Of a DNA stretch of 64,000 nucleotides, positions 18,001 through 62,500 are shown one piece after another (position 1 is the first letter of the stretch; each line of letters opens with the position of its first letter). The position numbers and the translations under genes are program-made. Under the pieces are notes generated by a model. The model was given only the letters and a program-made list of their open reading frames with translations, was not told the DNA's origin and made no database searches. The DNA lies in NCBI GenBank assembly GCA_965649825.1, contig OZ287714.1, forward strand, positions 243,527-307,526, in the 5' to 3' direction. This DNA comes from Penicillus capitatus. Lineage: Eukaryota; Plantae; Chlorophyta.

Positions 18001-18616
18001 AATTCTCTTCGGCATCGCTGACTGCGCCGGACAGTTTCCGCAGGTGAAGGAGAGACAAACTCAGCAAACCGATCACCGCATCTGTTTCCTGGCCGGCGAG
18101 TCCGATGGATAGCAAGTTCAGGAGCATGCTGATACTGGGCTGCTCTCTTTTGGATGTCGCTCGTGGTAGATGTTTAATGTTTGTACGTGGGTTTGTTATT
18201 CTCTCGACAGTGAGTTGTTCCGCATCGAATTCCTCTTCGCGGAGCAGTAGGCGAAAGGTTGAGTCGTGCCTTGCTGGATCAATCGAGTTCAAAAACCAGT
18301 GAATGAATCGCGCTAACTGACCGCAGATGCACTTCCTGGCTTTAAAGACTCTCACCGAGTGGGCTTGAATGATACAACGACCCAGGTGATATATGGTTTC
18401 TGGCTTGAGAAGGCCAGCGTTGGCAGTTTTTTCTTCTTCTTTCAGTTGAATGATGGAATCGACGATTTCTCGTGTTTCTTCGTAGTCGTCGAGTTCCTTA
18501 CACGAAGAATCCGCCGTCGAGCTTGCCGTCGCAGTGGAAGACGATTCTTCTGCTCCATTTCTTCGCAGGACGTTGAATAACGACTGCAGCAAATGCTTCT
18601 CTCGCGGCGACGACAT
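1..18616 (-). CDS. Giant midasin-like six-AAA+ protein (>=6,150 aa, 3' end outside window): ARM-like N-terminus, 6 AAA_5/MoxR-type modules, long helical linker, tandem Ig-like/ASH domains
   Basis: Manual splicing joins ORF 15953-18616, ORF 11095-16020 and a stop-free frame from 11094 to base 1. Exons are 18616-16085, 16032-11148, 11094-9316 and 9261-<1. GT-AG introns are 16033-16084 (52 nt), 11095-11147 (53 nt) and 9262-9315 (54 nt); removing the first two restores the Walker A motifs GTTGVGK|T and GQPGIG|KT. Walker A/B pairs: GTTGVGKT/WVLLDE, GRAGSGKT/VFIVDN, GKPAVGKT/WFVADE, GEAGFKT/IFVVED, GQPGIGKT/WILLDE, GGTCSKKT/FVFFDD. Midasin-style FRLFATQNP and RMS/KL-FFSQF/RNRF sensor-I and R-finger motifs are present. 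Confidence 0.88.
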
Positions 18617-29312: not shown

Positions 29313-29674
29313 CGACTACTGTTACTAAGTGGATCGTCAAGCAATCTTCTCATGCTTCTGGTGGCGCTGGATGATCATGACAGCCCATCTGCGCAATCGT
29401 AGAATGTCTTTTGAAGTACTGACTCAAGCGCATGTTCTAAGGGACACGCCTCTCTCTCACACACAGGACAATGCGACCTGCTGACGTTATGATGGCCTTT
29501 TGTTTCTTTCGACGTTGAACACTGCTCCACTTTAATGTGACTTGACTCTGCATGCATGCGATGTTCTGTTTTCGATGATGTTGTTGTTGTCACTGTCTGT
29601 CTGACGTCGGTCCTCGTCAGAAGGACGACAACGATTCATTCGCGCAGAAGTACGTTAATCATTCGTTAGTGGGG

Positions 29675-42363: not shown

Positions 42364-43362
42364 TGAACGCGTCTGTCACTTCAGATCCGAGTTGGAATTA
42401 ACTCTATTGAAGGTGGTGCGTCTATTCCATCCGATCCTGTATTTATTTATCACATGCACAAACACAAACATCAAACCAAGAGATGGCTCAGAGAGACATG
42501 TGGATCCAAGCGACCGTTCCACAGAAGTGGCAGTTTATAACGCAAGAGAGTCTGTATCACGGCATCGCAACACGACACACTTATCTAGTAGGGACAATCA
42601 CTTAACTCTGCCCATTAGCACAAAAGAGATCACTGATTTTGAACGCAGTTTATAGCAGGAGTGTTTCAGTCGATTTTTAGGGTTAAACTCCAAGCTACGT
42701 CGTCTGAACTTCTTTAAAGAAAGGGATGCTCAACTGGATAATCGCTTGCACTATTCATGTTACCGTTAAAAATACAGAAGAGGCACGAGCTAAAGCCTGA
42801 TTGAAGGCTCTCATGATCCATCGAATAAGGAGTGTGTGGGTTTGTAGGAGCCTTTGTTGGGTGGAACGTCAGCCTTGATCAAGGATCTGGAAACGGCCGG
42901 TCCAAAATTCGATCTGTACGTGACAAGTCTCGTCATAAGAATAGGACAATCGAAGCAATCTCAACGAACACGAAGTCTGTCTTTTGATCTGGAGTGAAGT
43001 CACTAGCAGCAGATTCTAACAACCTCAGAGATCAATGCAAGCTCAACATCTGCTTCGTGTAATGCATCTAATAAGCAGCTGCAGCTAGTTGAAGTCAAGG
43101 TGCAGAGTGCAAGCAGCAAACCTGAGTCTTCTACAGAAGGTTGACACGATTCTCTAGACTGCACAAAGTGGCCAATTACCACAGACGATCGGCTATCGTT
43201 ATCGCGATAAGATCTCGACATTTCCAGGCCACACGCTGCAGTGGCTCTGAAGACTATAAGGACATGACATGTACAGTATTCTCTCAAAAAACCTTTAAAT
43301 TGGTTCTCCCTGCTGAATTTGTCCGATTGGTAAAAGTGCCAAAAATGAAGAACTGGGGAGAT

Positions 43363-44700
43363 TTATTTTTTTACGACTGTTGCTAGGTCGGCCTTCACTG
43401 CAACATTGGTTGCACTCAGATTTGGTTCCTGTGTCACCGGAACTTTAAAATCCAGCTCAACACCCTTTTCAAAGACCAAACAGTGTGTCGAACCCCCAAA
43501 ATGAAACATTCCAATGTCATCTCCCCTCTTAACCACTTGACCTGCCACGACTGTAATTTCGCAGCTCGATACCTCTGCCATTCCCACTGTCACCATGGCA
43601 ATCAAACCAATAGCAGGATTATCTGCACGAATAAAAATAATGCCCCGTGTTGCCACAGATGTAATAAATGGTTGAGATTCATTTGGTGCTGCCGGATCAG
43701 GACTGTCGCTGTAAACACTCTCCGACGGACTTTGAAGATAGAAAGTTCCGTCAACGATCGAAGTTTTCTCAATAACCCCATCCACTGGACTGTGCCAGCA
43801 GTGATAGCTTAAAGCACTCAAATATGCTTGATATACTATACCGCCAGCAAATTGAAGAGCAAGGGAATCATCATTAAGCATATCCCTCAGTGAATACGGC
43901 TGACCCTTCAAGATTATGTCAGCAGACAGCCGCACACCTGTCTTGTACTGCAATGGTGCCGATTCACAAGCATTGACTATTTCTGCTTCACCAACTGGCC
44001 GTTGGCCTTCTCTAAACTTCCTTATGAAGAAGTCATCCCAGCTATTAAAACCGAGATACTTATCGTTCTCATCTGGCACTTCAAAGATTTGTTCGAATGT
44101 CAAATCGGGCTTGTTATCGAATGGCTGCAGTGCCACCTCGACCATCTGCTGTTTGGCAGGATCACTAAACCAAGGAATAGAATGCACAGGTCCAGAATTA
44201 TCACCTTCAGCAAGTACATATCTCGATTTCTCTCCGGCCAAAAAAGCACTCCAGTACTGCAAGACATCCTTGAAGTATCTGTTAAATTTGACATTTGCAA
44301 ACGTGTAGTAACCAGATGATGTTCCCATGGGCCAGTCTAACAGTGCATTGATTGGGAAACCGACCAAACCTTGCGCCTCATTATCATCTGCGTCCACGAT
44401 GAACTCCGGAGCGGTGGTCATAATCGCGTTCAGCAGATCCAAAAATTCCTTCCATGTCTTTACGGCTGGCGCCGAGGTCGGATCTTCTTTGTCATGGTTC
44501 AGGGCTTCGACGAACATGCCTTGCGTCGAAATGTCTAACAGTGGATCGTTGGCGACCATGTTGTATAACATTCGAACAGGAAAGTGATACTCTGACACTT
44601 CAGTGACCGTAGCCCTCTCTTTAAGCTTCGAAATCCATTTCTCTAGTAGCGTTTGATTTTTCAACCAGCTGCCCGGTCGTTTTTTGGAACAGCAAAACAT
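43363..44700 (-). CDS. Phosphatidylserine-decarboxylase-related (PSDC N-domain, PsiD-like) pyruvoyl-dependent decarboxylase, intronless
   Basis: 445-aa single ORF: RPGSWL..LLEKWI, QGMF, GLVGFPINALLDWPMGT, FNSWDDFFIRKFREGQRP, VNACES, KGQPYSL, YQAYLSALSYHCWHSPVDG, GMAEVSSC, GMFHFGG-STHCLVF (self-cleavage/pyruvoyl site). This pattern is characteristic of the fungal/bacterial PsiD-like PSD subfamily. Confidence 0.88.
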   Translation of the reverse strand: MFCCSKKRPGSWLKNQTLLEKWISKLKERATVTEVSEYHFPVRMLYNMVANDPLLDISTQGMFVEALNHDKEDPTSAPAVKTWKEFLDLLNAIMTTAPEFIVDADDNEAQGLVGFPINALLDWPMGTSSGYYTFANVKFNRYFKDVLQYWSAFLAGEKSRYVLAEGDNSGPVHSIPWFSDPAKQQMVEVALQPFDNKPDLTFEQIFEVPDENDKYLGFNSWDDFFIRKFREGQRPVGEAEIVNACESAPLQYKTGVRLSADIILKGQPYSLRDMLNDDSLALQFAGGIVYQAYLSALSYHCWHSPVDGVIEKTSIVDGTFYLQSPSESVYSDSPDPAAPNESQPFITSVATRGIIFIRADNPAIGLIAMVTVGMAEVSSCEITVVAGQVVKRGDDIGMFHFGGSTHCLVFEKGVELDFKVPVTQEPNLSATNVAVKADLATVVKK

Positions 44701-46535
44701 GTCGCGCCAAACGTTTCTCGGAGATTAAGAAAAGCGATGGACTTAAAAACACTCGTCGAGAACAAAAGAGAATTGCGTCGGCGCTCCGACCAGGATGCCT
44801 CGGGAAGCGAAATTTGCACAAAGCATCCATGCCAGACGATTTTTATATTCTGGCCTGATGTGACTGAACCTCCGTCGTCAACAAAGATCCGCGATCGAAA
44901 ATGAAGGATCTGCTTGTTTTGACAACGGCGGTTGACCGCCGACGAAGACGCGTTTTGAAGGACGATTACCATCTTCTATATCCCGAGGCGTATGTTTCTG
45001 ACTAGAACTCGTATGGCGACATGCAAGTGTTAATTCTCTTTATTGGTAAGCAGCGCATCGCAGAGAAGGAGAGAGAAGAGTTGTTCGTAAGATCTAACCT
45101 GTCGAGGCAGTCATCTCACACCTCTGAAGCTTGATATCACATTACTTCAAGGTCATAGCCGCGTTCCGTGGCAGTCACAGGCTCATTCTTCCTCAATTCC
45201 ATTCCCCGGCACTGCCTAGTTGAAAGTGTTGGGACAAAAGGATCCTTGCAGAATGGGAGAATCTGTTGAAACTAACTGACACATCTCTTATTCTGGCATT
45301 CGTGCAATGTATTTTCGTCATTAGAGTCCATTTGCTTTCCGGATGATGATGATCTGTCAACGCAAATTGAGCTATAGAATTCCTTTTATGAAAACGGACT
45401 CTCATCGCATTCGATTCGGAAATGTGCAACGTTCTTTCAAAGAGAGGGTATTGTTCCTTCAGGAAATGGCGATCATTAATTCAAAAACGGATTGCCTTGT
45501 GGGAGCTGTAGATGGTTGGACATCCAGAAGTGTCTCGTGACGCGAACGCGCTTCGACAATAGAAAACTCCGATGAATCAGTTTCAATACCGGATGTTTGT
45601 CGCTTATGAGCATGATGCATATGCAGTCAGTCAGGTGTAGAAATATCCATTGACGCAAGTGTCATTTACTAATATGCTGTAATGGCAGTCAGAATTGCAC
45701 TAGAGTAATTATTGTAGGCGAAGGCACCAACCATCGTTAGAAATCTATTTCACATATGGATCTTTTTGTCCTGTGAAACACTAGGAAACGCCATTTTCAC
45801 AAAAGGGTTGATGCAATAAGTTAGCAATTGTGAGAGACGACAATGCATGGTACGATGTATTTTGTTCTCGCAGAACTATTGTTGCAACCAGTCAGGACAG
45901 GTGGTCCAGTTGAACGATACTGTTCTAGTCCACCTACGACGCGTCAGAACTGCAGCACGAGGACCGTTTTTTTACAAACGAGTGAAACTTTTCCTGTCTG
46001 CGATATATAAATCTACTGTTGAGGACGACTTCTTCCTTGTTACATCTTTCTTCGCCGATGAGAGCATTTACACATATAGATCATAAAGTTGTTGATCCTA
46101 GTGAACTGTGCACAGCGGCCAAATGACATGCAAAGACATCATCGCAGCCAAATTCCGCAACAGTGAGTTTTTATGAGCATCCCTTCGAAGTGCTCGTCAA
46201 CAGTGTTTCTAGAAGTGTGTGTTCGCATAGCTGAGCAGCTTGTATGCTCTGTGCGCACGCACTTTTCACTTGCACGTCAAAGAATTCGTCTTGTGTAGGT
46301 ACTCGATGTCGAATGACAATATCTCGGCGACGGGAAGCCCCGTACGGAACGATGTAATGAGTGCCAACAGCAGTGAAGTTGCTGCTGTCGGCTTAGCATC
46401 TGATAACGTATACCTACAAAGACTAGTGATTGATTCACTAAGTTATGTTTTGTAGGGAAACGGAGTTTAAACAAGAACTCTAGAAAGTATGGCCATAGCC
46501 ATAACACTGTCATGCACCTGAAGGGCAGGATGGAA

Positions 46536-47554: not shown

Positions 47555-50500
47555 CTAAAAAGACTTTTGCGCAGTCACGGTGTCCAATGGCTCGTCTGAG
47601 CAAACCTGCATGCTATCTAGGTGCTCCTCAACAACCTTGAGACCTTGGGCAGAGATAGACGTACTCTGGCCGCTCGGTGGTGGTGCGCCGAACGCGACCC
47701 TTGAAAATGGGACGTCATCCTCGACCACCAAGACGGCGGCGAACGCCCCGTCCGAGCGACCCTGCGCGTTGGCACCGTGGTGCCCCACGTCCCCGTGGCG
47801 AGAGAATCCAGCTAAGCCGGCTAGATCGTGGTGATCCGGACCCGCGGCTCGATTACGGTTGGATTTTTCCGAGACCCCTTGCGCACGGCAACGGCGTCCA
47901 ATGTCTCGCGTGAGTGTTCCTGCATGCTAGTTAGGTACATCCCTACGCCCTTGTACACAGAAAGCCGAACTCCGGGGGCTCGGTGGTGGTGCGCCGAACG
48001 CGACCCCGAAAAATGGGACTTCATCCTCGACCACCAAGACGGCGGCGAACGCCCCGTCCGAGCGACCCTGCACGTTGGCACCGTGGTGCCCCACTCCCCG
48101 GTGGCGAGAGAATCCAGCTAAGCCGGCTAGATCGTGGTGATCCGGACCCGCGGCTCGGTTACGGTTGGATTTTTTCGAGACCCCTTGCGCACGGCAACGG
48201 CGACCAATGTCTCGGGTGAGTGTTCCTGCATGCTAGTTAGGTACATCCCTACGCCCTTGTACACAGAAAGCCGAACTCCGGGGGCTCGGTGGTGGTGCGC
48301 CGATCGCGACCCCGAAAAATGGGACTTCATCCTCGACCACCAAGACGGCGGCGAACGCCCCGTCCGAGCGACCCTGCACGTTGGCACCGTGGTGCCACAC
48401 GCCCCCGTGGCGAGAGAATCAAGCGAAGCCGGCTAGATCGTGGTGATCCGGACCCGCGGCTCGGTTACACTTGTGTTTTTCCGAGACCCCTTGCGCACGG
48501 CAACGGCGACCAATGTCTCGCGTGAGTGTTCCTGCATGCTAGTTAGGTACATCCCTACGCCCTTAAGCAGAGATGGCCGCACTCCGGGGGCTCGGCGGTG
48601 GTGCGCCGAACGCGACCCTTGAAAATGGGACGTCATCCTCGACCACCAAGACGGCAGCGAACGCCCCGTCCGAGCGACCCTGCGCGTTGGCACCGTGGTG
48701 CCCCACGCCCCCGTGGCGAGAGAATCCAGCGAAGCCGGCTAGATCGTGGTGATCCGGACCCGCGGCTCGGTTACACTTGTGTTTTTCCGAGACCCCTTGC
48801 GCACGGCAACGGCGACCAATGTCTCGCGTGAGTGTTCCTGCATGCTAGTTAGGTACATCCCTACGCCCTTGTACAAAGAATGCCGCACTCCGGGGGCTCG
48901 GCGGTGGTGCGCCGATCGCGACCCTTGAAAATGGGACTTCATCCTCGACCACCAAGACGGCGGCGAACGCCCCGTCCGAGCGACCCTGCGCGTTGGCACC
49001 GTGGTGCCACACGCCCCCGTGGCGAGAGAATCCAGCGAAGCCGGCTAGATCGTGGTGATCCGGACCCGCGGCTCGGTTACGGTTGGATTTTTTCGAGACC
49101 CCTTGCGCACCCCACCGGCGTCCAATGTCTCGGGTGAGTGTTCCTGCACGCTAGTTAGGTACATCCCCACGCCCTTGTACAAAGAATGCCGCACTCCGGG
49201 GGCTCGGCGGTGGTGCGCCGATCGCGACCCTTGAAAATGGGACTTCATCCTCGACCACCAAGACGGCGGCGAACGCCCCGTCCGAGCGACCCTGCGCGTT
49301 GGCACCGTGGTGCCACACGCCCCCGTGGCGAGAGAATCCAGCGAAGCCGGCTAGATCGTGGTGATCCGGACCCGCGGCTCGGTTACGGTTGGATTTTTTC
49401 GAGACCCCTTGCGCACCCCACCGGCGTCCAATGTCTCGGGTGAGTGTTCCTGCACGCTAGTTAGGTACATCCCCACGCCCTTGTACAAAGAATGCCGCAC
49501 TCCGGGGGCTCGGCGGTGGTGCGCCGAGCGCGACCCTTGAAAATGGGACTTCATCCTCGACCACCAAGACGGCGGCGAACGCCCCGTCCGAGCGACCCTG
49601 CGCGTTGGCACCGTGGTGCCACACGCCCCCGTGGCGAGAGAATCAAGCGAAGCCGGCTAGATCGTGGTGATCCGGACCCGCGGCTCGGTTACACTTGTGT
49701 TTTTTCGAGACCCCTTGCGCACCCCACCGGCGTCCAATGTCTCGGGTGAGTGTTCCTGCACGCTAGTTAGGTACATCCCCACGCCCTTGTACAAAGAATG
49801 CCGCACTCCGGGGGCTCGGCGGTGGTGCGCCGATCGCGACCCTTGAAAATGGGACTTCATCCTCGACCACCAAGACGGCGGCGAACGCCCCGTCCGAGCG
49901 ACCCTGCGCGTTGGCACCGTGGTGCCACACGCCCCCGTGGCGAGAGAATCCAGCGAAGCCGGCTAGATCGTGGTGATCCGGACCCGCGGCTCGGTTACGG
50001 TTGGATTTTTTCGAGACCCCTTGCGCACCCCACCGGCGTCCAATGTCTCGGGTGAGTGTTCCTGCACGCTAGTTAGGTACATCCCCACGCCCTTGTACAA
50101 AGAATGCCGCACTCCGGGGGCTCGGCGGTGGTGCGCCGATCGCGACCCTTGAAAATGGGACTTCATCCTCGACCACCAAGACGGCGGCGAACGCCCCGTC
50201 CGAGCGACACTGCGCGTTGGCACCGTGGTGCCCCACGCCCCCGTGGCGAGAGAATCAAGCGAAGCCGGCTAGATCGTGGTGATCCGGACCCGCGGCTCGG
50301 TTACGGTTGGATTTTTTCGAGACCCCTTGCGCACCCCACCGGCGTCCAATGTCTCGGGTGAGTGTTCCTGCACGCTAGTTAGGTACATCCCCACGCCCTT
50401 GTACAAAGAATGCCGCACTCCGGGGGCTCGGCGGTGGTGCGCCGAACGCGACCCCGAAAAATGGGACTTCATCCTCGACCACCAAGACGGCGGCGAACGC

Positions 50501-53500
50501 CCCGTCCGAGCGACCCTGCGCGTTGGCACCGTGGTGCCACACGCCCCCGTGGCGAGAGAATCAAGCGAAGCCGGCTAGATCGTGGTGATCCGGACCCGCG
50601 GCTCGGTTACGGTTGGATTATTTCGAGACCCCTTGCGCACCCCACCGGCGTCCAATGTCTCGGGTGAGTGTTCCTGCATGCTAGTTAGGTACATCCCTAC
50701 GCCCTTGTACAAAGAATGCCGCACTCCGGGGGCTCGGCGGTGGTGCGCCGATCGCGACCCTTGAAAATGGGACTTCATCCTCGACCACCAAGACGGCGGC
50801 GAACGCCCCGTCCGAGCGACACTGCGCGTTGGCACCGTGGTGCCCCACGCCCCCGTGGCGAGAGAATCCAGCGAAGCCGGCTAGATCGTGGTGATCCGGA
50901 CCCGCGGCTCGGTTACGGTTGGATTTTTTCGAGACCCCTTGCGCACCCCACCGGCGTCCAATGTCTCGGGTGAGTGTTCCTGCACGCTAGTTAGGTACAT
51001 CCCCACGCCCTTGTACAAAGAATGCCGCACTCCGGGGGCTCGGTGGTGGTGCGCCGATCGCGACCCTTGAAAATGGGACTTCATCCTCGACCACCAAGAC
51101 GGCGGCGAACGCCCCGTCCGAGCGACACTGCGCGTTGGCACCGTGGTGCCACACGCCCCCGTGGCGAGAGAATCAAGCGAAGCCGGCTAGATCGTGGTGA
51201 TCCGGACCCGCGGCTCGGTTACGGTTGGATTTTTTCGAGACCCCTTGCGCACCCCACCGGCGTCCAATGTCTCGGGTGAGTGTTCCTGCACGCTAGTTAG
51301 GTACATCCCCACGCCCTTGTACAAAGAATGCCGCACTCCGGGGGCTCGGCGGTGGTGCGCCGAACGCGACCCCGAAAAATGGGACGTCATCCTCGACCAC
51401 CAAGACGGCGGCGAACGCCCCGTCCGAGCGACACTGCGCGTTGGCACCGTGGTGCCACACGCCCCCGTGGCGAGAGAATCCAGCGAAGCCGGCTAGATCG
51501 TGGTGATCCGGACCCGCGGCTCGGTTACGGTTGGATTTTTTCGAGACCCCTTGCGCACCCCACCGGCGTCCAATGTCTCGGGTGAGTGTTCCTGCACGCT
51601 AGTTAGGTACATCCCCACGCCCTTGTACAAAGAATGCCGCACTCCGGGGGCTCGGCGGTGGTGCGCCGAACGCGACCCCGAAAAATGGGACGTCATCCTC
51701 GACCACCAAGACGGCGGCGAACGCCCCGTCCGAGCGACACTGCGCGTTGGCACCGTGGTGCCACACGCCCCCGTGGCGAGAGAATCAAGCGAAGCCGGCT
51801 AGATCGTGGTGATCCGGACCCGCGGCTCGGTTACGGTTGGATTTTTTCGAGACCCCTTGCGCACCCCACCGGCGTCCAATGTCTCGGGTGAGTGTTCCTG
51901 CACGCTAGTTAGGTACATCCCCACGCCCTTGTACAAAGAATGCCGCACTCCGGGGGCTCGGCGGTGGTGCGCCGATCGCGACCCTTGAAAATGGGACTTC
52001 ATCCTCGACCACCAAGACGGCGGCGAACGCCCCGTCCGAGCGACCCTGCGCGTTGGCACCGTGGTGCCACACGCCCCCGTGGCGAGAGAATCAAGCGAAG
52101 CCGGCTAGATCGTGGTGATCCGGACCCGCGGCTCGGTTACACTTGTGTTTTTTCGAGACCCCTTGCGCACCCCACCGGCGTCCAATGTCTCGGGTGAGTG
52201 TTCCTGCACGCTAGTTAGGTACATCCCCACGCCCTTGTACAAAGAATGCCGCACTCCGGGGGCTCGGCGGTGGTGCGCCGATCGCGACCCTTGAAAATGG
52301 GACTTCATCCTCGACCACCAAGACGGCGGCGAACGCCCCGTCCGAGCGACCCTGCGCGTTGGCACCGTGGTGCCACACGCCCCCGTGGCGAGAGAATCAA
52401 GCGAAGCCGGCTAGATCGTGGTGATCCGGACCCGCGGCTCGGTTACGGTTGGATTTTTTCGAGACCCCTTGCGCACCCCACCGGCGTCCAATGTCTCGGG
52501 TGAGTGTTCCTGCACGCTAGTTAGGTACATCCCCACGCCCTTGTACAAAGAATGCCGCACTCCGGGGGCTCGGCGGTGGTGCGCCGAACGCGACCCTTGA
52601 AAATGGGACTTCATCCTCGACCACCAAGACGGCGGCGAACGCCCCGTCCGAGCGACCCTGCACGTTGGCACCGTGGTGCCCCACGCCCCGGTGGCGAGAG
52701 AATCCAGCTAAGCCGGCTAGATCGTGGTGATCCGGACCCGCGGCTCGGTTACGGTTGGATTTTTTCGAGACCCCTTGCGCACCCCACCGGCGTCCAATGT
52801 CTCGGGTGAGTGTTCCTGCATGCTAGTTAGGTACATCCCTACGCCCTTGTACAAAGAATGCCGCACTCCGGGGGCTCGGCGGTGGTGCGCCGATCGCGAC
52901 CCTTGAAAATGGGACTTCATCCTCGACCACCAAGACGGCGGCGAACGCCCCGTCCGAGCGACACTGCGCGTTGGCACCGTGGTGCCCCACGCCCCCGTGG
53001 CGAGAGAATCCAGCGAAGCCGGCTAGATCGTGGTGATCCGGACCCGCGGCTCGGTTACGGTTGGATTTTTTCGAGACCCCTTGCGCACCCCACCGGCGTC
53101 CAATGTCTCGGGTGAGTGTTCCTGCACGCTAGTTAGGTACATCCCCACGCCCTTGTACAAAGAATGCCGCACTCCGGGGGCTCGGCGGTGGTGCGCCGAA
53201 CGCGACCCCGAAAAATGGGACGTCATCCTCGACCACCAAGACGGCGGCGAACGCCCCGTCCGAGCGACCCTGCACGTTGGCACCGTGGTGCCACACGCCC
53301 CCGTGGCGAGAGAATCAAGCGAAGCCGGCTAGATCGTGGTGATCCGGACCCGCGGCTCGGTTACGGTTGGATTTTTTCGAGACCCCTTGCGCACCCCACC
53401 GGCGTCCAATGTCTCGGGTGAGTGTTCCTGCACGCTAGTTAGGTACATCCCCACGCCCTTGTACAAAGAATGCCGCACTCCGGGGGCTCGGCGGTGGTGC

Positions 53501-56500
53501 GCCGAACGCGACCCCGAAAAATGGGACGTCATCCTCGACCACCAAGACGGCGGCGAACGCCCCGTCCGAGCGACCCTGCACGTTGGCACCGTGGTGCCAC
53601 ACGCCCCCGTGGCGAGAGAATCAAGCGAAGCCGGCTAGATCGTGGTGATCCGGACCCGCGGCTCGGTTACGGTTGGATTTTTTCGAGACCCCTTGCGCAC
53701 CCCACCGGCGTCCAATGTCTCGGGTGAGTGTTCCTGCACGCTAGTTAGGTACATCCCCACGCCCTTGTACAAAGAATGCCGCACTCCGGGGGCTCGGTGG
53801 TGGTGCGCCGATCGCGACCCTTGAAAATGGGACTTCATCCTCGACCACCAAGACGGCGGCGAACGCCCCGTCCGAGCGACACTGCGCGTTGGCACCGTGG
53901 TGCCACACGCCCCCGTGGCGAGAGAATCAAGCGAAGCCGGCTAGATCGTGGTGATCCGGACCCGCGGCTCGGTTACACTTGTGTTTTTTCGAGACCCCTT
54001 GCGCACCCCACCGGCGTCCAATGTCTCGGGTGAGTGTTCCTGCATGCTAGTTAGGTACATCCCTACGCCCTTGTACAAAGAATGCCGCACTCCGGGGGCT
54101 CGGCGGTGGTGCGCCGATCGCGACCCTTGAAAATGGGACTTCATCCTCGACCACCAAGACGGCGGCGAACGCCCCGTCCGAGCGACACTGCGCGTTGGCA
54201 CCGTGGTGCCACACGCCCCCGTGGCGAGAGAATCAAGCGAAGCCGGCTAGATCGTGGTGATCCGGACCCGCGGCTCGGTTACGGTTGGATTTTTTCGAGA
54301 CCCCTTGCGCACCCCACCGGCGTCCAATGTCTCGGGTGAGTGTTCCTGCACGCTAGTTAGGTACATCCCCACGCCCTTGTACAAAGAATGCCGCACTCCG
54401 GGGGCTCGGCGGTGGTGCGCCGAACGCGACCCTTGAAAATGGGACTTCATCCTCGACCACCAAGACGGCGGCGAACGCCCCGTCCGAGCGACCCTGCACG
54501 TTGGCACCGTGGTGCCCCACGCCCCGGTGGCGAGAGAATCCAGCTAAGCCGGCTAGATCGTGGTGATCCGGACCCGCGGCTCGGTTACGGTTGGATTTTT
54601 TCGAGACCCCTTGCGCACCCCACCGGCGTCCAATGTCTCGGGTGAGTGTTCCTGCACGCTAGTTAGGTACATCCCCACGCCCTTGTACAAAGAATGCCGC
54701 ACTCCGGGGGCTCGGTGGTGGTGCGCCGATCGCGACCCTTGAAAATGGGACTTCATCCTCGACCACCAAGACGGCGGCGAACGCCCCGTCCGAGCGACCC
54801 TGCGCGTTGGCACCGTGGTGCCACACGCCCCCGTGGCGAGAGAATCAAGCGAAGCCGGCTAGATCGTGGTGATCCGGACCCGCGGCTCGGTTACGGTTGG
54901 ATTTTTTCGAGACCCCTTGCGCACCCCACCGGCGTCCAATGTCTCGGGTGAGTGTTCCTGCACGCTAGTTAGGTACATCCCCACGCCCTTGTACAAAGAA
55001 TGCCGCACTCCGGGGGCTCGGCGGTGGTGCGCCGATCGCGACCCCGAAAAATGGGACTACATCCTCGACCACCAAGACGGCGGCGAACGCCCCGTCCGAG
55101 CGACACTGCGCGTTGGCACCGTGGTGCCACACGCCCCCGTGGCGAGAGAATCAAGCGAAGCCGGCTAGATCGTGGTGATCCGGACCCGCGGCTCGGTTAC
55201 GGTTGGATTTTTCCGAGACCCGTTGCGCACCCCACCGGCGTCCAATGTCTCGGGTGAGTGTTCCTGCATGCTAGTTAGGTACATCCCTACGCCCTTAAGC
55301 AGAGATGGCCGCACTCCGGGGGCTCGGCGGTGGTGCGCCGATCGCGACCCTTGAAAATGGGACTTCATCCTCGACCACCAAGACGGCGGCGAACGCCCCG
55401 TCCGAGCGACCCTGCACGTTGGCACCGTGGTGCCACACGCCCCCGTGGCGAGAGAATCAAGCGAAGCCGGCTAGATCGTGGTGATCCGGACCCGCGGCTC
55501 GGTTACGGTTGGATTTTTCCGAGACCCCTTGCGCACCCCACCGGCGTCCAATGTCTCGGGTGAGTGTTCCTGCATGCTAGTTAGGTACATCCCTACGCCC
55601 TTGGGCAGAGATGGCCGCACTCCGGGGGCTCGGCGGTGGTGCGCCGAACGCGACCCTTGAAAATGGGACTTCATCCTCGACCACCAAGACGGCGGCGAAC
55701 GCCCCGTCCGAGCGACCCTGCACGTTGGCACCGTGGTGCCACACGCCCCCGTGGCGAGAGAATCAAGCGAAGCCGGCTAGATCGTGGTGATCCGGACCCG
55801 CGGCTCGGTTACACTTGTGTTTTTCCGAGACACCTTGCGCACGGCAACGGCGACCAATGTCTCGCGTGAGTGTTCCTGCATGCTAGTTAGGTACATCCCT
55901 ACGCCCTTGTACAAAGAAAGCCGCACTCCGGGGGCTCGGCGGTGGTGCGCCGAACGCGACCCTTGAAAATGGGACTTCATCCTCGACCACCAAGACGGCG
56001 GCGAACGCCCCGTCCGAGCGACCCTGCGCGTTGGCACCGTGGTGCCACACGCCCCCGTGGCGAGAGAATCCAGCGAAGCCGGCTAGATCGTGGTGATCCG
56101 GACCCGCGGCTCGGTTACACTTGTGTTTTTCCGAGACACCTTGCGCACGGCTACGGCGTCCAATGTCTCGGGTGAGTGTTCCTGCACGCTAGTTAGGTAC
56201 ATCCCCACGCTTTTAAGCAGAGATGGCCGCACTCCGGGGGCTCGGCGGTGGCGCGCCGAACGCGACCCCGAAAAATGGGACTACATCCTCGACCACCAAG
56301 ACGGCGGCGAACGCCCCGTCCGAGCGACCCTGCACGTTGGCACCGTGGTGCCCCACGCCCCCGTGGCGAGAGAATCCAGCGAAGCCGGCTAGATCGTGGT
56401 GATCCGGACCCGCGGCTCGGTTACGGTTGGATTTTTCCGAGACCCCTTGCGCACGGCAACGGCGACCAATGTCTCGTGTGAGTGTTCCTGCATGCTAGTT

Positions 56501-59500
56501 AGGTACATCCCTACGCCCTTGGGCAGAGATGGCCGCACTCCGGGGGCTCGGCGGTGGTGCGCCGATCGCGACCCTTGAAAATGGGACTTCATCCTCGACC
56601 ACCAAGACGGCGGCGAACGCCCCGTCCGAGCGACCCTGCGCGTTGGCACCGTGGTGCCACACGCCCCCGTGGCGAGAGAATCCAGCGAAGCCGGCTAGAT
56701 CGTGGTGATCCGGACCCGCGGCTCGGTTACGGTTGGATTTTTTTCGAGACCCCTTGCGCACCCCACCGGCGTCCAATGTCTCGGGTGAGTGTTCCTGCAT
56801 GCTAGTTAGGTACATCCCTACGCCCTTGTACACAGAATGCCGCACTCCGGGGGCTCGGTGGTGGTGCGCCGAACGCGACCCTTGAAAATGGGACTTCATC
56901 CTCGACCACCAAGACGGCGGCGAACGCCCCGTCCGAGCGACCCTGCGCGTTGGCACCGTGGTGCCACACGCCCCCGTGGCGAGAGAATCAAGCGAAGCCG
57001 GCTAGATCGTGGTGATCCGGACCCGCGGCTCGGTTACGGTTGGATTTTTTCGAGACCCCTTGCGCACCCCACCGGCGTCCAATGTCTCGGGTGAGTGTTC
57101 CTGCATGCTAGTTAGGTACATCCCTACGCCCTTAAGCAGAGATGGCCGCACTCCGGGGGCTCGGCGGTGGTGCGCCGATCGCGACCCTTGAAAATGGGAC
57201 TTCATCCTCGACCACCAAGACGGCGGCGAACGCCCCGTCCGAGCGACCCTGCGCGTTGGCACCGTGGTGCCCCACGCCCCCGTGGCGAGAGAATCAAGCG
57301 AAGCCGGCTAGATCGTGGTGATCCGGACCCTCGGCTCGGTTACACTTGTGTTTTTCCGAGACCCCTTGCGCACGGCAACGGCGACCAATGTCTCGCGTGA
57401 GTGTTCCTGCATGCTAGTTAGGTACATCCCTACGCCCTTAAGCAGAGATGGCCACACTCCGGGGGCTCGGCGGTGGTGCGCCGAACGCGACCCTTGAAAC
57501 TGGGACGTCATCCTCGACCACCAAGACGGCAGCGAACGCCCCGTCCGAGCGACCCTGCGCGTTGGCACCGTGGTGCCCCACCCCCCCGTGGCGAGAGAAT
57601 CCAGCGAAGCCGGCTAGATCGTGGTGATCCGGACCCGCGGCTCGGTTACACTTGTGTTTTTCCGAGACCCCTTGCGCACGGCAACGGCGACCAATGTCTC
57701 GCGTGAGTGTTCCTGCATGCTAGTTAGGTACATCCCTACCCCCTTAAGCAGAGATGGCCGCACTCCGGGGGCTCGGCGGTGGTGCGCCGATCGCGACCCT
57801 TGAAAATGGGACTTCATCCTCGACCACCAAGACGGCGGCGAACGCCCCGTCCGAGCGACCCTGCACGTTGGCACCGTGGTGCCCCACGCCCCCGTGGCGA
57901 GAGAATCAAGCGAAGCCGGCTAGATCGTGGTGATCCGGACCCGCGGCTCGGTTACACTTGTGTTTTTCCGAGACCCCTTGCGCACGGCAACGGCGACCAA
58001 TGTCTCGCGTGAGTGTTCCTGCATGCTAGTTAGGTACATCCCTACGCCCTTAAGCAGAGATGGCCGCACTCCGGGGGCTCGGCGGTGGTGCGCCGAACGC
58101 GACCCCGAAAAATGGGACGTCATCCTCGACCACCAAGACGGCGGCGAACGCCCCGTCCGAGCGACCCTGCACGTTGGCACCGTGGTGCCACACGCCCCCG
58201 TGGCGAGAGAATCAAGCGAAGCCGGCTAGATCGTGGTGATCCGGACCCGCGGCTCGGTTACGGTTGGATTTTTTCGAGACCCCTTGCGCACCCCACCGGC
58301 GTCCAATGTCTCGGGTGAGTGTTCCTGCACGCTAGTTAGGTACATCCCCACGCCCTTGTACAAAGAATGCCGCACTCCGGGGGCTCGGCGGTGGTGCGCC
58401 GATCGCGACCCCGAAAAATGGGACTTCATCCTCGACCACCAAGACGGCGGCGAACGCCCCGTCCGAGCGACCCTGCGCGTTGGCACCGTGGTGCCCCACG
58501 CCCCCGTGGCGAGAGAATCCAGCGAAGCCGGCTAGATCGTGGTGATCCGGACCCGCGGCTCGGTTACACTTGTGTTTTTCCGAGACCCCTTGCGCACGGC
58601 AACGGCGTCCAATGTCTCGCGTGAGTGTTCCTGCATGCTAGTTAGGTACATCCCTACGCCCTTAAGCAGAGATGGCCGCACTCCGGGGGCTCGGCGGTGG
58701 TGCGCCGATCGCGACCCTTGAAAATGGGACTTCATCCTCGACCACCAAGACGGCGGCGAACGCCCCGTCCGAGCGACCCTGCGCGTTGGCACCGTGGTGC
58801 CACACGCCCCCGTGGCGAGAGAATCAAGCGAAGCCGGCTAGATCGTGGTGATCCGGACCCGCGGCTCGGTTACGGTTGGATTTTTCCGAGACCCCTTGCG
58901 CACCCCACCGGCGACCAATGTCTCGCGTGAGTGTTCCTGCATGCTAGTTAGGTACATCCCTACGCCCTTAAGCAGAGATGGCCGCACTCCGGGGGCTCGG
59001 CGGTGGTGCGCCGAACGCGACCCTTGAAAATGGGACTTCATCCTCGACCACCAAGACGGCGGCGAACGCCCCGTCCGAGCGACCCTGCACGTTGGCACCG
59101 TGGTGCCACACGCCCCCGTGGCGAGAGAATCAAGCGAAGCCGGCTAGATCGTGGTGATCCGGACCCGCGGCTCGGTTACACTTGTGTTTTTCCGAGACAC
59201 CTTGCGCACGGCAACGGCGACCAATGTCTCGCGTGAGTGTTCCTGCATGCTAGTTAGGTACATCCCTACGCCCTTGTACAAAGAAAGCCGCACTCCGGGG
59301 GCTCGGCGGTGGTGCGCCGAACGCGACCCTTGAAAATGGGACTTCATCCTCGACCACCAAGACGGCGGCGAACGCCCCGTCCGAGCGACCCTGCGCGTTG
59401 GCACCGTGGTGCCCCACGCCCCCGTGGCGAGAGAATCAAGCGAAGCCGGCTAGATCGTGGTGATCCGGACCCGCGGCTCGGTTACACTTGTGTTTTTCCG

Positions 59501-62500
59501 AGACCCCTTGCGCACGGCAACGGCGACCAATGTCTCGCGTGAGTGTTCCTGCATGCTAGTTAGGTACATCCCTACGCCCTTAAGCAGAGATGGCCGCACT
59601 CCGGGGGCTCGGCGGTGGTGCGCCGAACGCGACCCCGAAAAATGGGACGTCATCCTCGACCACCAAGACGGCGGCGAACGCCCCGTCCGAGCGACCCTGC
59701 ACGTTGGCACCGTGGTGCCACACGCCCCCGTGGCGAGAGAATCAAGCGAAGCCGGCTAGATCGTGGTGATCCGGACCCGCGGCTCGGTTACGGTTGGATT
59801 TTTTCGAGACCCCTTGCGCACCCCACCGGCGTCCAATGTCTCGGGTGAGTGTTCCTGCATGCTAGTTAGGTACATCCCTACGCCCTTGTACAAAGAAAGC
59901 CGCACTCCGGGGGCTCGGCGGTGGTGCGCCGAACGCGACCCTTGAAAATGGGACTTCATCCTCGACCACCAAGACGGCGGCGAACGCCCCGTCCGAGCGA
60001 CCCTGCGCGTTGGCACCGTGGTGCCCCACGCCCCCGTGGCGAGAGAATCAAGCGAAGCCGGCTAGATCGTGGTGATCCGGACCCGCGGCTCGGTTACACT
60101 TGTGTTTTTCCGAGACACCTTGCGCACGGCAACGGCGACCAATGTCTCGCGTGAGTGTTCCTGCATGCTAGTTAGGTACATCCCTACGCCCTTGTACAAA
60201 GAAAGCCGCACTCCGGGGGCTCGGCGGTGGTGCGCCGAACGCGACCCTTGAAAATGGGACTTCATCCTCGACCACCAAGACGGCGGCGAACGCCCCGTCC
60301 GAGCGACCCTGCGCGTTGGCACCGTGGTGCCCCACGCCCCCGTGGCGAGAGAATCAAGCGAAGCCGGCTAGATCGTGGTGATCCGGACCCGCGGCTCGGT
60401 TACACTTGTGTTTTTCCGAGACCCCTTGCGCACGGCAACGGCGACCAATGTCTCGCGTGAGTGTTCCTGCATGCTAGTTAGGTACATCCCTACGCCCTTA
60501 AGCAGAGATGGCCGCACTCCGGGGGCTCGGCGGTGGTGCGCCGAACGCGACCCCGAAAAATGGGACGTCATCCTCGACCACCAAGACGGCGGCGAACGCC
60601 CCGTCCGAGCGACCCTGCACGTTGGCACCGTGGTGCCACACGCCCCCGTGGCGAGAGAATCAAGCGAAGCCGGCTAGATCGTGGTGATCCGGACCCGCGG
60701 CTCGGTTACGGTTGGATTTTTTCGAGACCCCTTGCGCACCCCACCGGCGTCCAATGTCTCGGGTGAGTGTTCCTGCATGCTAGTTAGGTACATCCCTACG
60801 CCCTTGTACAAAGAAAGCCGCACTCCGGGGGCTCGGCGGTGGTGCGCCGATCGCGACCCTTGAAAATGGGACTTCATCCTCGACCACCAAGACGGCGGCG
60901 AACGCCCCGTCCGAGCGACCCTGCGCGTTGGCACCGTGGTGCCCCACGCCCCCGTGGCGAGAGAATCCAGCGAAGCCGGCTAGATCGTGGTGATCCGGAC
61001 CCGCGGCTCGGTTACACTTGTGTTTTTCCGAGACACCTTGCGCACGGCAACGGCGACCAATGTCTCGCGTGAGTGTTCCTGCATGCTAGTTAGGTACATC
61101 CCTACGCCCTTGTACAAAGAAAGCCGCACTCCGGGGGCTCGGCGGTGGTGCGCCGAACGCGACCCTTGAAAATGGGACTTCATCCTCGACCACCAAGACG
61201 GCGGCGAACGCCCCGTCCGAGCGACCCTGCGCGTTGGCACCGTGGTGCCACACGCCCCCGTGGCGAGAGAATCAAGAGAAGCCGGCTAGATCGTGGTGAT
61301 CCGGACCCGCGGCTCGGTTACGGTTGTGTTTTTCCGAGACCCCTTGCGCACCCCACCGGCGTCCAATGTCTCGGGTGAGTGTTCCTGTATGCTAGTTAGG
61401 TACATCCCTACGCCCTTGTACAAAGAAAGCCGAACTCCGGGGGCTCGGTGGTGGTGCGCCGATCGCGACCCTTGAAAATGGGACTTCATCCTCGACCACC
61501 AAGACGGCGGCGAACGCCCCGTCCGAGCGACCCTGCGCGTTGGCACCGTGGTGCCACACGCCCCCGTGGCGAGAGAATCAAGCGAAGCCGGCTAGATCGT
61601 GGTGATCCGGACCCGCGGCTCGGTTACACTTGTGTTTTTCCGAGACACCTTGCGCACGGCTACGGCGTCCAATGTCTCGGGTGAGTGTTCCTGCACGCTA
61701 GTTAGGTACATCCCCACGCCCTTGGGCAGAGATGGCCGCACTCTGGGTGCTCGGCGGTGGTGCGCCGAACGCGACCCCGAAAAATGGGACGTCATCCTCG
61801 ACCACCAAGACGGCGGCGAACGCCCCGTCCGAGCGACCCTGCGCGTTGGCACCGTGGTGCCACACGCCCCCGTGGCGAGAGAATCCAGCGAAGCCGGCTA
61901 GATCGTGGTGATCCGGACCCGCGGCTCGGTTACACTTGTGTTTTTCCGAGACACCTTGCGCACGGCTACGGCGTCCAATGTCTCGGGTGAGTGTTCCTGC
62001 ATGCTAGTTAGGTACATCCCTACGCCCTTAAGCAGAGATGGCCGCACTCCGGGGGCTCGGCGGTGGTGCGCCGATCGCGACCCTTGAAAATGGGACTTCA
62101 TCCTCGACCACCAAGACGGCGGCGAACGCCCCGTCCGAGCGACCCTGCGCGTTGGCACCGTGGTGCCCCACGCCCCCGTGGCGAGAGAATCCAGCGAAGC
62201 CGGCTAGATCGTGGTGATCCGGACCCGCGGCTCGGTTACGGTTGGATTTTTCCGAGACCCCTTGCGCACGGCAACGGCGACCAATGTCTCGTGTGAGTGT
62301 TCCTGCATGCTAGTTAGGTACATCCCTACGCCCTTAAGCAGAGATGGCCGCACTCCGGGGGCTCGGCGGTGGTGCGCCGATCGCGACCCTTGAAAATGGG
62401 ACTTCATCCTCGACCACCAAGACGGCGGCGAACGCCCCGTCCGAGCGACCCTGCGCGTTGGCACCGTGGTGCCCCACGCCCCCGTGGCGAGAGAATCCAG

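What the first reader, a model, noticed from the sequence alone, without database searches (positions are those of the whole stretch)
43363..44700. Intronless PsiD-like decarboxylase as the last gene before the satellite: candidate horizontal acquisition with specialised-metabolism potential
Seen: a complete 445-aa ORF with the PSDC-type N-domain and the GG-ST pyruvoyl site. It has no introns, targeting peptide or TM anchor, and it sits isolated in wide spacers, unlike its tightly packed neighbours. Established: this subfamily is mainly fungal and bacterial and includes the Psilocybe L-tryptophan decarboxylase PsiD; housekeeping PSD1/PSD2 have membrane anchors or C2 domains. Inference: a transferred, soluble, PLP-independent decarboxylase that may make tryptamine or other amines in an alga. 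The substrate cannot be read from sequence.
Basis: partly seen in the sequence, partly recalled or inferred. Interest (0 to 1): 0.72.

Follow-up and report, generated by a model that had tools for sequence, protein, structure and literature searches.

The report
Bacterial-origin pyruvoyl decarboxylase in siphonous alga
A green seaweed of the Caulerpa/Bryopsis order carries an intact, selected, intronless gene of bacterial origin for a self-cleaving (pyruvoyl, PLP-independent) amino-acid decarboxylase, but its substrate pocket differs from the psilocybin enzyme PsiD, so it is a solid old gene transfer of unknown substrate, not a likely tryptamine maker.

Summary
Window 43363-44700 (-) is an intact 445-aa ORF with PSDC (PF12588) and PS_Dcarbxylase (PF02666) domains, a GGST cleavage site (G402-T405) and the catalytic His300. 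It has no intron, no N-terminal extension and no membrane anchor.

The host is a eukaryote, a siphonous green alga (Bryopsidales), although the public record (OZ245997.1) is titled as a bacterial MAG, 'Putridiphycobacter sp.'.

The protein is 64-69% identical to proteins in verified or named bacterial genomes, but only 38-40% identical to the fungal enzymes. Close eukaryotic relatives are few: a 93% ortholog, two 76-77% copies, two Caulerpa lentillifera genes and four unnamed algal-type contigs. No close ortholog appears in Bryopsis, Ostreobium, Ulva or Chlamydomonas.

Bacterial origin is therefore well supported, but the transfer is old. Codon usage matches the host, and dN/dS is 0.07.

The tryptamine idea is not supported. 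Only 1 of 10 PsiD indole-contact residues is kept. The pocket matches the bacterial consensus and resembles the A. oryzae arginine decarboxylase Ao-ADC1, but it lacks two Asp residues found in Ao-ADC1. The substrate remains unknown.

Overall this is a new member of a known kind, of moderate-low interest.

The parts
43363..44700 (-). Complete intronless CDS (445 aa incl. stop) of a PSDC-type pyruvoyl-dependent decarboxylase proenzyme
   Evidence: identical to P0121 on the 6.93 Mb contig
44143..44580 (-). N-terminal helical PSDC domain (PF12588), aa 41-186
   Evidence: E 5e-36; helical in the AF2 model
43426..44037 (-). Catalytic PS_Dcarbxylase domain (PF02666), aa 222-425
   Evidence: E 1e-37; Foldseek matches to PsiD, Ao-ADC1 and E. 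coli PSD
43486..43497 (-). GGST autocleavage motif (G402 G403 S404 T405). Ser404 is the predicted pyruvoyl precursor. Cleavage would give a beta chain (aa 1-403) and an alpha chain (aa 404-445).
   Evidence: sequence read; alignment to the chain ends of 9jer and 8x4q; invariant in 150 homologs
43801..43803 (-). His300, equivalent to PsiD His296 and Ao-ADC1 His332 (self-cleavage base)
   Evidence: invariant
43963..43965 (-). Glu246 of the invariant C-E-S motif. It aligns with the Asp of E. coli PSD 'PADG' (the acidic position of the triad); this role is inferred.
44701..45552 (-). 5' flank conserved with the orthologous locus L001 (77% nt identity); presumed promoter/5'UTR
42457..43362 (-). 3' flank conserved with L001 (74% nt identity); presumed 3'UTR
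47672..64000 (.). 306-bp GC-rich (64%) tandem satellite, >53 copies, running off the window. It is context, not part of the gene.

Best explanation
The ORF encodes a functional, cytosolic-type, pyruvoyl-dependent (PLP-independent) amino-acid decarboxylase of the PSDC/PsiD/Ao-ADC1 branch of the phosphatidylserine-decarboxylase superfamily.

Mechanism, inferred from the solved homologs: the ~50 kDa proenzyme cleaves itself between Gly403 and Ser404, with His300 acting as the base and Glu246 in the acidic triad position. This yields a beta chain (1-403) and a 42-residue alpha chain whose N-terminal Ser becomes a pyruvoyl group. The pyruvoyl group forms a Schiff base with the alpha-amino group of a free amino acid, which drives CO2 loss and releases an amine.

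Origin: the gene came from bacteria. The nearest named relatives are marine Alphaproteobacteria such as Amorphus, followed by cyanobacteria and Endozoicomonas. It entered an ancestor within the siphonous green algae (Bryopsidales, Caulerpa side), and it has since been inherited vertically, brought to host composition and kept under purifying selection.

Substrate: the pocket is essentially identical to the consensus of its bacterial relatives, so it most likely keeps their still uncharacterised substrate. That substrate is most likely a free amino acid other than tryptophan, and probably other than arginine.

Shown here: domains, motifs, fold, bacterial affinity, eukaryotic host context, selection, pocket residues. 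Inferred: self-cleavage, catalysis, donor group, timing of the transfer, substrate class.
For: Domains and motif.

Solved homologs: Ao-ADC1 9jer E 2e-80 (profile 1.8e-109), PsiD E 2e-54 (2e-86), E. coli PSD 2.5e-5. The AF2 model has pLDDT 84.5. Foldseek target-normalised TM-scores are 0.83-0.86 to PsiD, 0.82-0.84 to Ao-ADC1 and 0.60-0.68 to E. coli PSD.

Catalytic residues: His300, G402, G403 and S404 are invariant in 150 homologs.

Bacterial affinity: 65-69% identity to P0005, P0009 and P0012, which lie in clear bacterial contexts (DnaG, CobS/T, Tn7, chorismate synthase), and 64-65% to Amorphus. The clade of the window plus P0001-58, separate from the 456-aa clade and the fungal enzymes, has 92% NJ bootstrap.

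Eukaryotic host: mTERF, UCH split by an intron, midasin-like AAA_5, and TGD1 with best hits to Caulerpa (82%), Bryopsis (73%) and Ostreobium (65%).

Other algal copies lie on eukaryotic contigs. A profile search found no further eukaryotic members.

Composition: GC3 is 0.446, against 0.48-0.53 for host neighbours and 0.72-0.78 for the three bacterial homolog genes examined (L005, L008, L009). The RSCU correlation is r = 0.49 with host genes and 0.05-0.12 for the bacterial genes.

Selection: dN/dS 0.073 against the 93% ortholog.

Pocket: the loops equal the bacterial consensus.

Free amino-acid context: 6 of 72 bacterial loci with the same pocket signature sit next to LodA-like amino-acid oxidase and LodB genes.
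Against: There is no biochemical evidence for any member of this pocket class. There is no transcript evidence for the window gene: no poly(A)-bearing contig was found and no TGTAA signal in the 3' flank.

Monophyly of the algal copies is weak. The 10-member algal clade has 33% NJ bootstrap and is lost under another taxon sampling. Only 2 shared derived residues support it, against 0 in controls. One transfer versus several is therefore unresolved.

Only distance (NJ) trees could be built; no ML program was available.

The host order was assigned from a single marker (TGD1).

The role assigned to the two Ao-ADC1 Asp residues (binding the guanidinium group) is my inference, because the structure paper is not held.

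The public record labels the contig as bacterial.
Confidence: 0.8

Rival explanations
1. It is a PsiD-like L-tryptophan (or 4-hydroxytryptophan) decarboxylase that makes tryptamine-type indole amines in the alga.
For: It has the same two-domain architecture and fold as PsiD. Caulerpa-type algae are known, from my own knowledge, to make indole alkaloids such as caulerpin.
Against: Of the 10 residues enclosing the indole in PsiD (L112, P114, Y117, F289, V292, Y338, L339, M373, T374, I376), only M373 is conserved. Y117, Y338 and L339 are N118, P339 and N340 here. Among 101 diverse family representatives, a PsiD-like pocket forms a separate class (11 representatives) from the window's class (14). 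Sequence similarity is higher to Ao-ADC1 than to PsiD (274 vs 188 bits; 370 vs 294). No psilocybin-cluster partners (PsiK, PsiM or PsiH types) are nearby.
Confidence: 0.05
2. It is a pyruvoyl-dependent arginine decarboxylase like A. oryzae Ao-ADC1, making agmatine for polyamine synthesis.
For: Ao-ADC1 is the closest characterised and solved relative by sequence. At the PsiD-defined pocket positions, 6 of 10 are identical and 4 are conservative.
Against: Identity is only 38%. The two Asp residues in the Ao-ADC1 pocket loops (SADS, GPDV) are Leu297 and Asn340 in the window and in nearly all of its bacterial relatives. The D297 + D/E340 signature is a separate small class (3 of 101 representatives). 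Whether these Asp residues bind the guanidinium group is my inference.
Confidence: 0.12
3. It is a genuine phosphatidylserine decarboxylase that makes phosphatidylethanolamine.
For: It has the PF02666 domain and the PSD fold, and databases name its relatives 'phosphatidylserine decarboxylase family protein'.
Against: All NCBIfam PSD equivalog models score far below their cut-offs (best 92.6 vs 371). There is no membrane anchor or amphipathic N-terminal membrane-binding region. The match to E. coli PSD is weak (E 2.5e-5, TM 0.6-0.68). The characterised subfamily member Ao-ADC1 has no PSD activity. The motif is GGST, not the canonical LGST.
Confidence: 0.04
4. There was no transfer: the gene is bacterial because the contig is bacterial, as the record title says ('MAG: Putridiphycobacter sp.'), or it is a bacterial contaminant or chimeric join in an algal assembly.
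For: The record title of OZ245997.1, and its inclusion in a GTDB-derived collection.
Against: The window holds eukaryote-type genes: mTERF, a UCH split over two ORFs, a midasin-like AAA_5, and plastid TGD1 that is 82% identical to a Caulerpa cluster. It also holds a satellite longer than 16 kb. The gene's GC3 (0.45) and codon usage fit the neighbours and not the bacterial homologs (0.72-0.78). An independent assembly from another sample has the 93% ortholog with conserved non-coding flanks on a 4.08 Mb contig that also carries the 99% TGD1 match. Contig coverage is 344x.
Confidence: 0.03
5. It is a recent, lineage-specific acquisition whose insertion is tied to the satellite or subtelomere-like region.
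For: The gene is the last recognisable gene before the satellite. In the related genome the ortholog also sits 5.3 kb from a different GC-rich satellite, and only 3.1 kb around the gene is alignable between the two genomes.
Against: Composition is host-like. dS is 0.44 between orthologs, with dN/dS 0.07. Copies at 76-77% and 54-63% identity exist in other algae, including Caulerpa. The gene therefore predates the split of these lineages.
Confidence: 0.05

Closest known systems
Uncharacterised bacterial 'phosphatidylserine decarboxylase family protein' of ~446-450 aa (e.g. Amorphus orientalis, Amorphus sp. MBR-141, Breoghania sp. L-A4, Hoeflea sp., Symploca sp., Endozoicomonas sp.)
   Same: Same length and PSDC+PSD architecture, 57-65% identity (named examples; up to 69% for unnamed bacterial contigs), colinear end to end. 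The pocket loops are identical (GLVGFPINALLDW, YQAFLSALSYHRWHS, DPSAPNASQP, VGMAEVSSC), as is the GGST site.
   Different: The window copy sits in a eukaryotic chromosome with host-like GC3 (0.45 vs 0.72-0.78 in the three bacterial homolog genes examined). It has 18 residues specific to its group (e.g. R301C, F293Y in the window and P0001) and a Met-Phe-Cys-Cys start. None of these bacterial proteins has a tested function.
Ao-ADC1, pyruvoyl-dependent arginine decarboxylase of Aspergillus oryzae (PDB 9JER/9JF5/9JFN)
   Same: Best solved sequence match (E 2e-80; profile 1.8e-109). It shares the GGST cleavage site, the catalytic His, the N-terminal helical domain and the fold (TM 0.73/0.84). Six of 10 pocket positions are identical.
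   Different: Identity is only 38%. Ao-ADC1 has Asp where the window has Leu297 and Asn340, and Ser where the window has Ala375. It is fungal, with insertions.
PsiD, L-tryptophan decarboxylase of Psilocybe cubensis (PDB 8X4Q/8ZIA)
   Same: Same superfamily branch, self-cleavage at GG|S, catalytic His296 equivalent to His300, and the same fold (TM 0.83-0.86 normalised to the target).
   Different: About 40% identity over the aligned part. The hydrophobic/aromatic indole cage is not conserved (1 of 10 positions). There is no psilocybin-cluster context.
Canonical phosphatidylserine decarboxylase (E. coli Psd, PDB 6L06/7CNW; eukaryotic PSD1/PSD2)
   Same: PF02666 catalytic fold, pyruvoyl chemistry, His and Ser of the autoprocessing triad.
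   Different: The sequence match is weak (E 2.5e-5). The motif is GGST, not LGST. Glu sits in place of the triad Asp. There is no membrane-binding segment, transit peptide or C2 domain. All PSD equivalog HMMs score below their cut-offs.

Membership tests
PSD superfamily of pyruvoyl-dependent decarboxylases (PF02666) | PS_Dcarbxylase catalytic domain above the Pfam gathering score | tested here: met
   130.1 bits vs cut-off 22; Foldseek to E. coli PSD E 1e-10
PSD superfamily of pyruvoyl-dependent decarboxylases (PF02666) | (L/G)G-S-(T/S) autocleavage motif with the Ser that becomes pyruvoyl, plus the catalytic His | tested here: met
   G402-G403-S404-T405 and H300, invariant in 150 homologs and aligned to the chain break in 9jer and 8x4q
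PSD superfamily of pyruvoyl-dependent decarboxylases (PF02666) | Actual self-cleavage and pyruvoyl formation | not testable with these tools
   Needs SDS-PAGE and mass spectrometry of recombinant protein
PSDC-type (PsiD/Ao-ADC1) soluble subfamily | N-terminal PSDC domain PF12588 fused to PF02666 | tested here: met
   124.2 bits vs cut-off 23.4; best PDB matches are 9jer and 8x4q
PsiD L-tryptophan decarboxylase | Hydrophobic/aromatic indole-binding cage (L112 P114 Y117 F289 V292 Y338 L339 M373 T374 I376) | tested here: not met
   Only M373 is identical; Y117N, Y338P, L339N, P114F, V292A, T374A
PsiD L-tryptophan decarboxylase | Psilocybin-cluster context (PsiK kinase, PsiM methyltransferase, PsiH P450) | tested here: not met
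   No such domains among the neighbouring ORFs
Ao-ADC1-type arginine decarboxylase | Ao-ADC1 pocket signature including Asp in the SADS and GPDV loops (presumed guanidinium binders; my inference) | tested here: inconclusive
   6 of 10 pocket positions are identical, but both Asp residues are replaced (L297, N340). The role of these Asp residues could not be checked because the structure paper is not held.
Canonical phosphatidylserine decarboxylase (Psd / PSD1 / PSD2) | Score above the NCBIfam equivalog cut-off | tested here: not met
   Best 92.6 vs 371; 77.9 vs 307; 56.2 vs 111.75
Canonical phosphatidylserine decarboxylase (Psd / PSD1 / PSD2) | Membrane anchor, targeting peptide or C2 domain | tested here: not met
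   No N-terminal extension, maximum KD(19) 1.61 in a core strand, and no further Pfam domains
Horizontally acquired bacterial gene in a eukaryote | Nested among bacterial sequences, not with the host lineage's vertical homologs | tested here: met
   64-69% identity to verified or named bacterial proteins. The clade with bacterial P0004-58 has 92% NJ bootstrap. Fungal enzymes are at 38-40%. NJ only, no ML.
Horizontally acquired bacterial gene in a eukaryote | Patchy distribution in the recipient lineage | tested here: met
   Found only in Caulerpa and a few unnamed algal contigs. Bryopsis KO-2023, Ostreobium, Ulva, Chlamydomonas and Chlorella are in the database but absent from the best 120 hits of two searches. 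More distant homologs are not excluded.
Horizontally acquired bacterial gene in a eukaryote | Physical integration in the host chromosome (not contamination) | tested here: met
   Same contig as the algal genes and the satellite. Host-like codon usage. Ortholog with conserved flanks in an independent assembly.

The most novel reading that the evidence does not exclude
Siphonous green algae of the Caulerpa side of Bryopsidales captured a bacterial PsiD/ADC1-family decarboxylase and diversified it. The window-type copy keeps the bacterial pocket, while a Caulerpa paralog line (P0037/P0058) has remodelled its pocket towards a hydrophobic one (F115C, P339Q/L, N340L/I). On this reading, the small gene family supplies amines for specialised metabolism in these algae, possibly including their indole alkaloids. 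That would be a second, independent recruitment of this enzyme family for alkaloid synthesis outside fungi.
Probability: 0.08. Interest if true: 0.65.

Novelty: new member of a known kind. Interest (0 to 1): 0.36.

Why it matters
It adds a well-documented bacterium-to-alga gene transfer in the giant-celled siphonous seaweeds, which are known to house intracellular bacteria.

It also shows that the largest pocket class of the PsiD/Ao-ADC1 decarboxylase family (14 of 101 diverse representatives, spread over several bacterial phyla) has no known substrate. One enzyme assay would annotate thousands of proteins now called 'phosphatidylserine decarboxylase family protein'.

On the practical side, it flags a 6.9 Mb algal chromosome deposited and reused as a bacterial MAG. 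Such a record can seed bacterial databases with algal proteins and distort HGT screens in both directions.

Tried and rejected
- The first structure prediction, with the 10-sequence algal alignment, gave pLDDT 51 and was discarded. A 150-sequence alignment fixed this.
- A Biopython bootstrap timed out and was replaced by vectorised NJ. No ML tree program is installed.
- The Ao-ADC1 enzymology paper PMC11107147 is not held, and the Odagaki structure paper is not in the library. The residues of Ao-ADC1 that contact agmatine could therefore not be taken from the source.
- Rfam found no RNA gene in the window, so no rRNA marker for the host was available.
- The GTDB scan with the single protein returned only the source record and a 39% Lachnoclostridium hit.
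- The search for wider synteny between the window and L001, L002 or L004 found none beyond the gene and ~0.9 kb of flank.
- No TGTAA poly(A) signal lies in the 3' flank of the window or L001, and no poly(A) is present on the short algal contigs. There is therefore no expression evidence.
- The neighbourhood analysis of 72 bacterial loci gave no general operon partner, only LodA/LodB in 6 loci.
- Literature searches for this gene family in Bryopsidales or Caulerpa returned nothing.
- Contamination, canonical PSD and PsiD-type readings were considered and rejected for the reasons given under the rival explanations.
Full report
**1. Observation**

- Pfam finds the PSDC domain (PF12588, aa 41-186, E 5e-36) and the PS_Dcarbxylase domain (PF02666, aa 222-425, E 1e-37).
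- The motif G402-G403-S404-T405 (window 43486-43497, read) aligns with the position where the solved homologs are physically cleaved into beta and alpha chains.
- The ORF is colinear over 98-100% of its length with bacterial homologs, so it has no intron.
- It starts at the same position as the bacterial proteins (MFCCSKKRPG vs MSRPNKRRPG), and an in-frame stop lies 27 nt upstream. There is no room for a transit peptide in this exon.
- The highest 19-residue hydropathy is 1.61, in a conserved core strand, so there is no membrane anchor.
- A 306-bp, 64% GC satellite runs from 47672 to the end of the window. The ORFs in the 2,971-bp gap have no Pfam match.
- The 3' gap of 999 bp is ordinary for the 33-45 kb part of the window. 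'Isolated' therefore applies only to the satellite side.

**2. The host**

The window is part of OZ245997.1 (6,932,391 bp), the same contig as ENA ERZ25074695 ctg340592 at 344x coverage. Its title is 'MAG: Putridiphycobacter sp. ... chromosome 1'. The content contradicts that label.
- It holds mTERF, a ubiquitin hydrolase domain split over two ORFs (an intron), a midasin-like AAA_5 protein of more than 1,600 aa, and an ECH + 3HCDH multifunctional protein.
- It holds a TGD1/MlaE plastid lipid permease whose best hits are all green algae. The match is 82% to a cluster containing Caulerpa lentillifera g8650, 73% to Bryopsis sp. KO-2023 and 65% to Ostreobium quekettii.

The host is therefore a siphonous green alga (Bryopsidales), apparently nearer to Caulerpa. 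This rests on one marker.

**3. Relatives**

Bacterial relatives:
- The closest named relatives are bacterial: Amorphus (64-65%), Symploca (63%), Endozoicomonas (60%), Breoghania and Hoeflea (57-58%).
- Three unnamed hits at 65-69% sit in clearly bacterial neighbourhoods (DnaG, carA, CobS/CobT, BolA, chorismate synthase, Tn7) at 59-64% GC.

Eukaryotic relatives are few:
- A 93% ortholog (P0001) lies on a 4.08 Mb contig from a second sample. That contig also carries a 99% TGD1 match.
- Two 76-77% copies (P0002, P0003/P0123) each lie next to an ALO-type oxidase gene.
- There are two Caulerpa lentillifera genes (62% and 60%).
- P0041 lies on a 69.6 kb contig with histone, PUF, LRR and kinase genes and a fragmented PNTB gene.
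- P0022, P0025 and P0058 lie on short, gene-poor contigs.

A profile built from these ten sequences found no further eukaryotic member. Bryopsis, Ostreobium, Ulva, Chlamydomonas, Chlorella and others are in the same database but do not appear among the best hits.

**4. Phylogeny**

Only NJ trees could be built.
- Window + P0001, and P0002 + P0003, each have 100% bootstrap, and the four together also have 100%.
- The larger clade that joins them to the bacterial 446-450-aa proteins, separate from the 456-aa bacterial clade and the fungal enzymes, has 92%.
- A clade of all ten algal sequences was recovered in two of three taxon samplings, but with only 33% support.
- Two shared derived residues (V42, D261) support it, against none in 20 bacterial control quartets.

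Bacterial origin is therefore well supported. Whether there was one transfer or more is open.

**5. Age and functionality**

- GC3 is 0.446. Host neighbours are at 0.48-0.53 and the bacterial homolog genes at 0.72-0.78.
- The RSCU correlation with host genes is 0.49, within the range of host-gene controls (0.36-0.85). For the bacterial genes it is 0.05-0.12.
- Against the 93% ortholog, dS is 0.44 and dN/dS is 0.073. Against the 76-77% copies, dN/dS is 0.15-0.17.
- Non-coding flanks of about 0.9 kb on each side are alignable at 74-77%.

This is an old, selected, resident gene. It is neither a recent arrival nor a contaminant.

**6. Likely function**

Solved relatives are ranked as follows.
- By sequence: Ao-ADC1 of Aspergillus oryzae (9JER) at E 2e-80, PsiD at 2e-54, E. 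coli PSD at 2.5e-5. The profile search gives 1.8e-109, 2e-86 and 3.7e-13.
- PsiD cleaves at G402|S403, and needs His296 and Ser403 (PMC11929908).
- An AF2 model from a 150-sequence alignment (pLDDT 84.5) matches PsiD (TM 0.83-0.86 normalised to the target) and Ao-ADC1 (0.73/0.84). E. coli PSD is far behind (0.60-0.68).
- His300, G402, G403 and S404 are invariant across 150 homologs.
- Glu246 of the invariant CES motif aligns with the Asp of E. coli 'PADG'.

I therefore infer self-cleavage at Gly403|Ser404, followed by pyruvoyl-mediated decarboxylation of a free amino acid.

**7. Substrate**

- The ten residues that enclose the indole in PsiD map to V113, F115, N118, Y293, A296, P339, N340, M374, A375 and V377 in the window. 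Only the Met is shared, so the aromatic/hydrophobic cage is absent.
- Ao-ADC1 shares six of these ten positions, and the other four are conservative changes.
- Ao-ADC1 carries Asp in two pocket loops (SADS, GPDV) where the window and almost all of its bacterial relatives have Leu297 and Asn340.
- Among 101 diverse 50%-identity representatives, the window's signature is the commonest class (14). The Ao-ADC1-like class has 3 and the PsiD-like class has 11.
- The four pocket loops of the window protein equal the consensus of about 110 bacterial relatives, so the alga most likely kept the bacterial substrate.
- The gene is mostly stand-alone in bacteria. In 6 of 72 loci (about four lineages), same-signature decarboxylases are clustered on the same strand with a LodA-like quinoprotein amino-acid oxidase and its LodB flavoprotein. 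This fits a free amino-acid or amine substrate better than a phospholipid.

My estimates are: tryptophan about 5%, arginine about 12%, phosphatidylserine about 4%, and some other amino acid for the remainder.

**8. Comparison with the known, and novelty**

The protein is a member of the PSD superfamily and of its PSDC-type soluble branch, and all sequence-level defining features are met. It is not a PsiD (pocket and cluster context not met). It is not a canonical PSD (all NCBIfam equivalog cut-offs missed). Its membership of the Ao-ADC1 specificity class is doubtful.

No held paper links this family with Bryopsidales or Caulerpa. I rate it a new member of a known kind: a documented ancient bacterial transfer of an enzyme from an uncharacterised specificity class. 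Interest is moderate-low. It would rise if the substrate proved to feed specialised metabolism.

**9.

Noticed in passing
whole window (= OZ245997.1, about 194-258 kb of a 6,932,391-bp record): The public record is titled 'MAG: Putridiphycobacter sp. ... chromosome 1' and sits in a GTDB-derived bacterial collection. The window, however, is eukaryotic green-algal DNA (mTERF, intron-split UCH, TGD1 82% to Caulerpa, a satellite longer than 16 kb). It is probably a mis-binned algal chromosome, and it could contaminate bacterial protein databases.
   Followed up: partly
window 47672-64000; L001 1-4653: The 93% ortholog in a second genome also lies a few kb (5.3 kb vs 3.0 kb) from a GC-rich tandem satellite on its 5' side. 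The two satellites (306 bp, 64% GC vs 329 bp, 62% GC) share no detectable sequence. Only 3.1 kb around the gene is alignable between the two genomes, and there is no synteny in the 10 kb 3' of it.
   Followed up: partly
Caulerpa lentillifera P0037 (g6267) and relative P0058, vs P0026 (g7343): One Caulerpa paralog line has a remodelled pocket (F115C, P339Q/L, N340L/I; Loop1 GQVACPIN / RRQVSCPIN), while the other keeps the bacterial signature. This may be a substrate shift after duplication.
   Followed up: partly
L033/L035 834-5797, L078/L080 1023-4826, L057 1048-5912, L047 7652-11967: In 6 of 72 bacterial or metagenomic loci, the same-class decarboxylase is clustered on the same strand with a LodA-like quinoprotein amino-acid oxidase (LodA_N + LodA_C; in L080 fused to an iron-containing redox domain PF14518) and a LodB-like flavoprotein. 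No function is known for this trio.
   Followed up: partly
ERZ25074695 ctg340143 (8x, L002) vs ctg340592 (344x, window); ERZ26696514 ctg303815 (116x, L004) vs ctg303836 (180x, L001): The 76-77% copies lie on contigs whose coverage ratio to the window-type contigs differs greatly between the two samples (1:43 vs 1:1.6). They probably belong to a second, related alga in the same samples, not to a paralog in the same genome. In both samples they lie next to an ALO/FAD_binding_4 oxidase gene.
   Followed up: no
window 44689-44700 (aa 1-4, MFCC): The window protein and its 93% ortholog begin Met-Phe-Cys-Cys-Ser-Lys-Lys-Arg, where bacteria have Met-Ser-Arg-Pro-Asn-Lys-Arg-Arg. A Cys-Cys pair next to basic residues resembles N-terminal S-acylation sites. 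This is speculative, but it could give peripheral membrane attachment.
   Followed up: no
window 24900-25433 and 25673-27079 (-); 29669-30511 and 30572-31291 (+); 11095-16020 and 15953-18616 (-): Neighbouring genes are split over adjacent ORFs in different frames: the UCH domain in two pieces, ECH and 3HCDH as two ORFs 60 bp apart, and two long overlapping ORFs (the AAA_5-containing 1,641-aa ORF and a following 887-aa ORF with no Pfam hit). The neighbours therefore have short introns, while the decarboxylase has none.
   Followed up: partly
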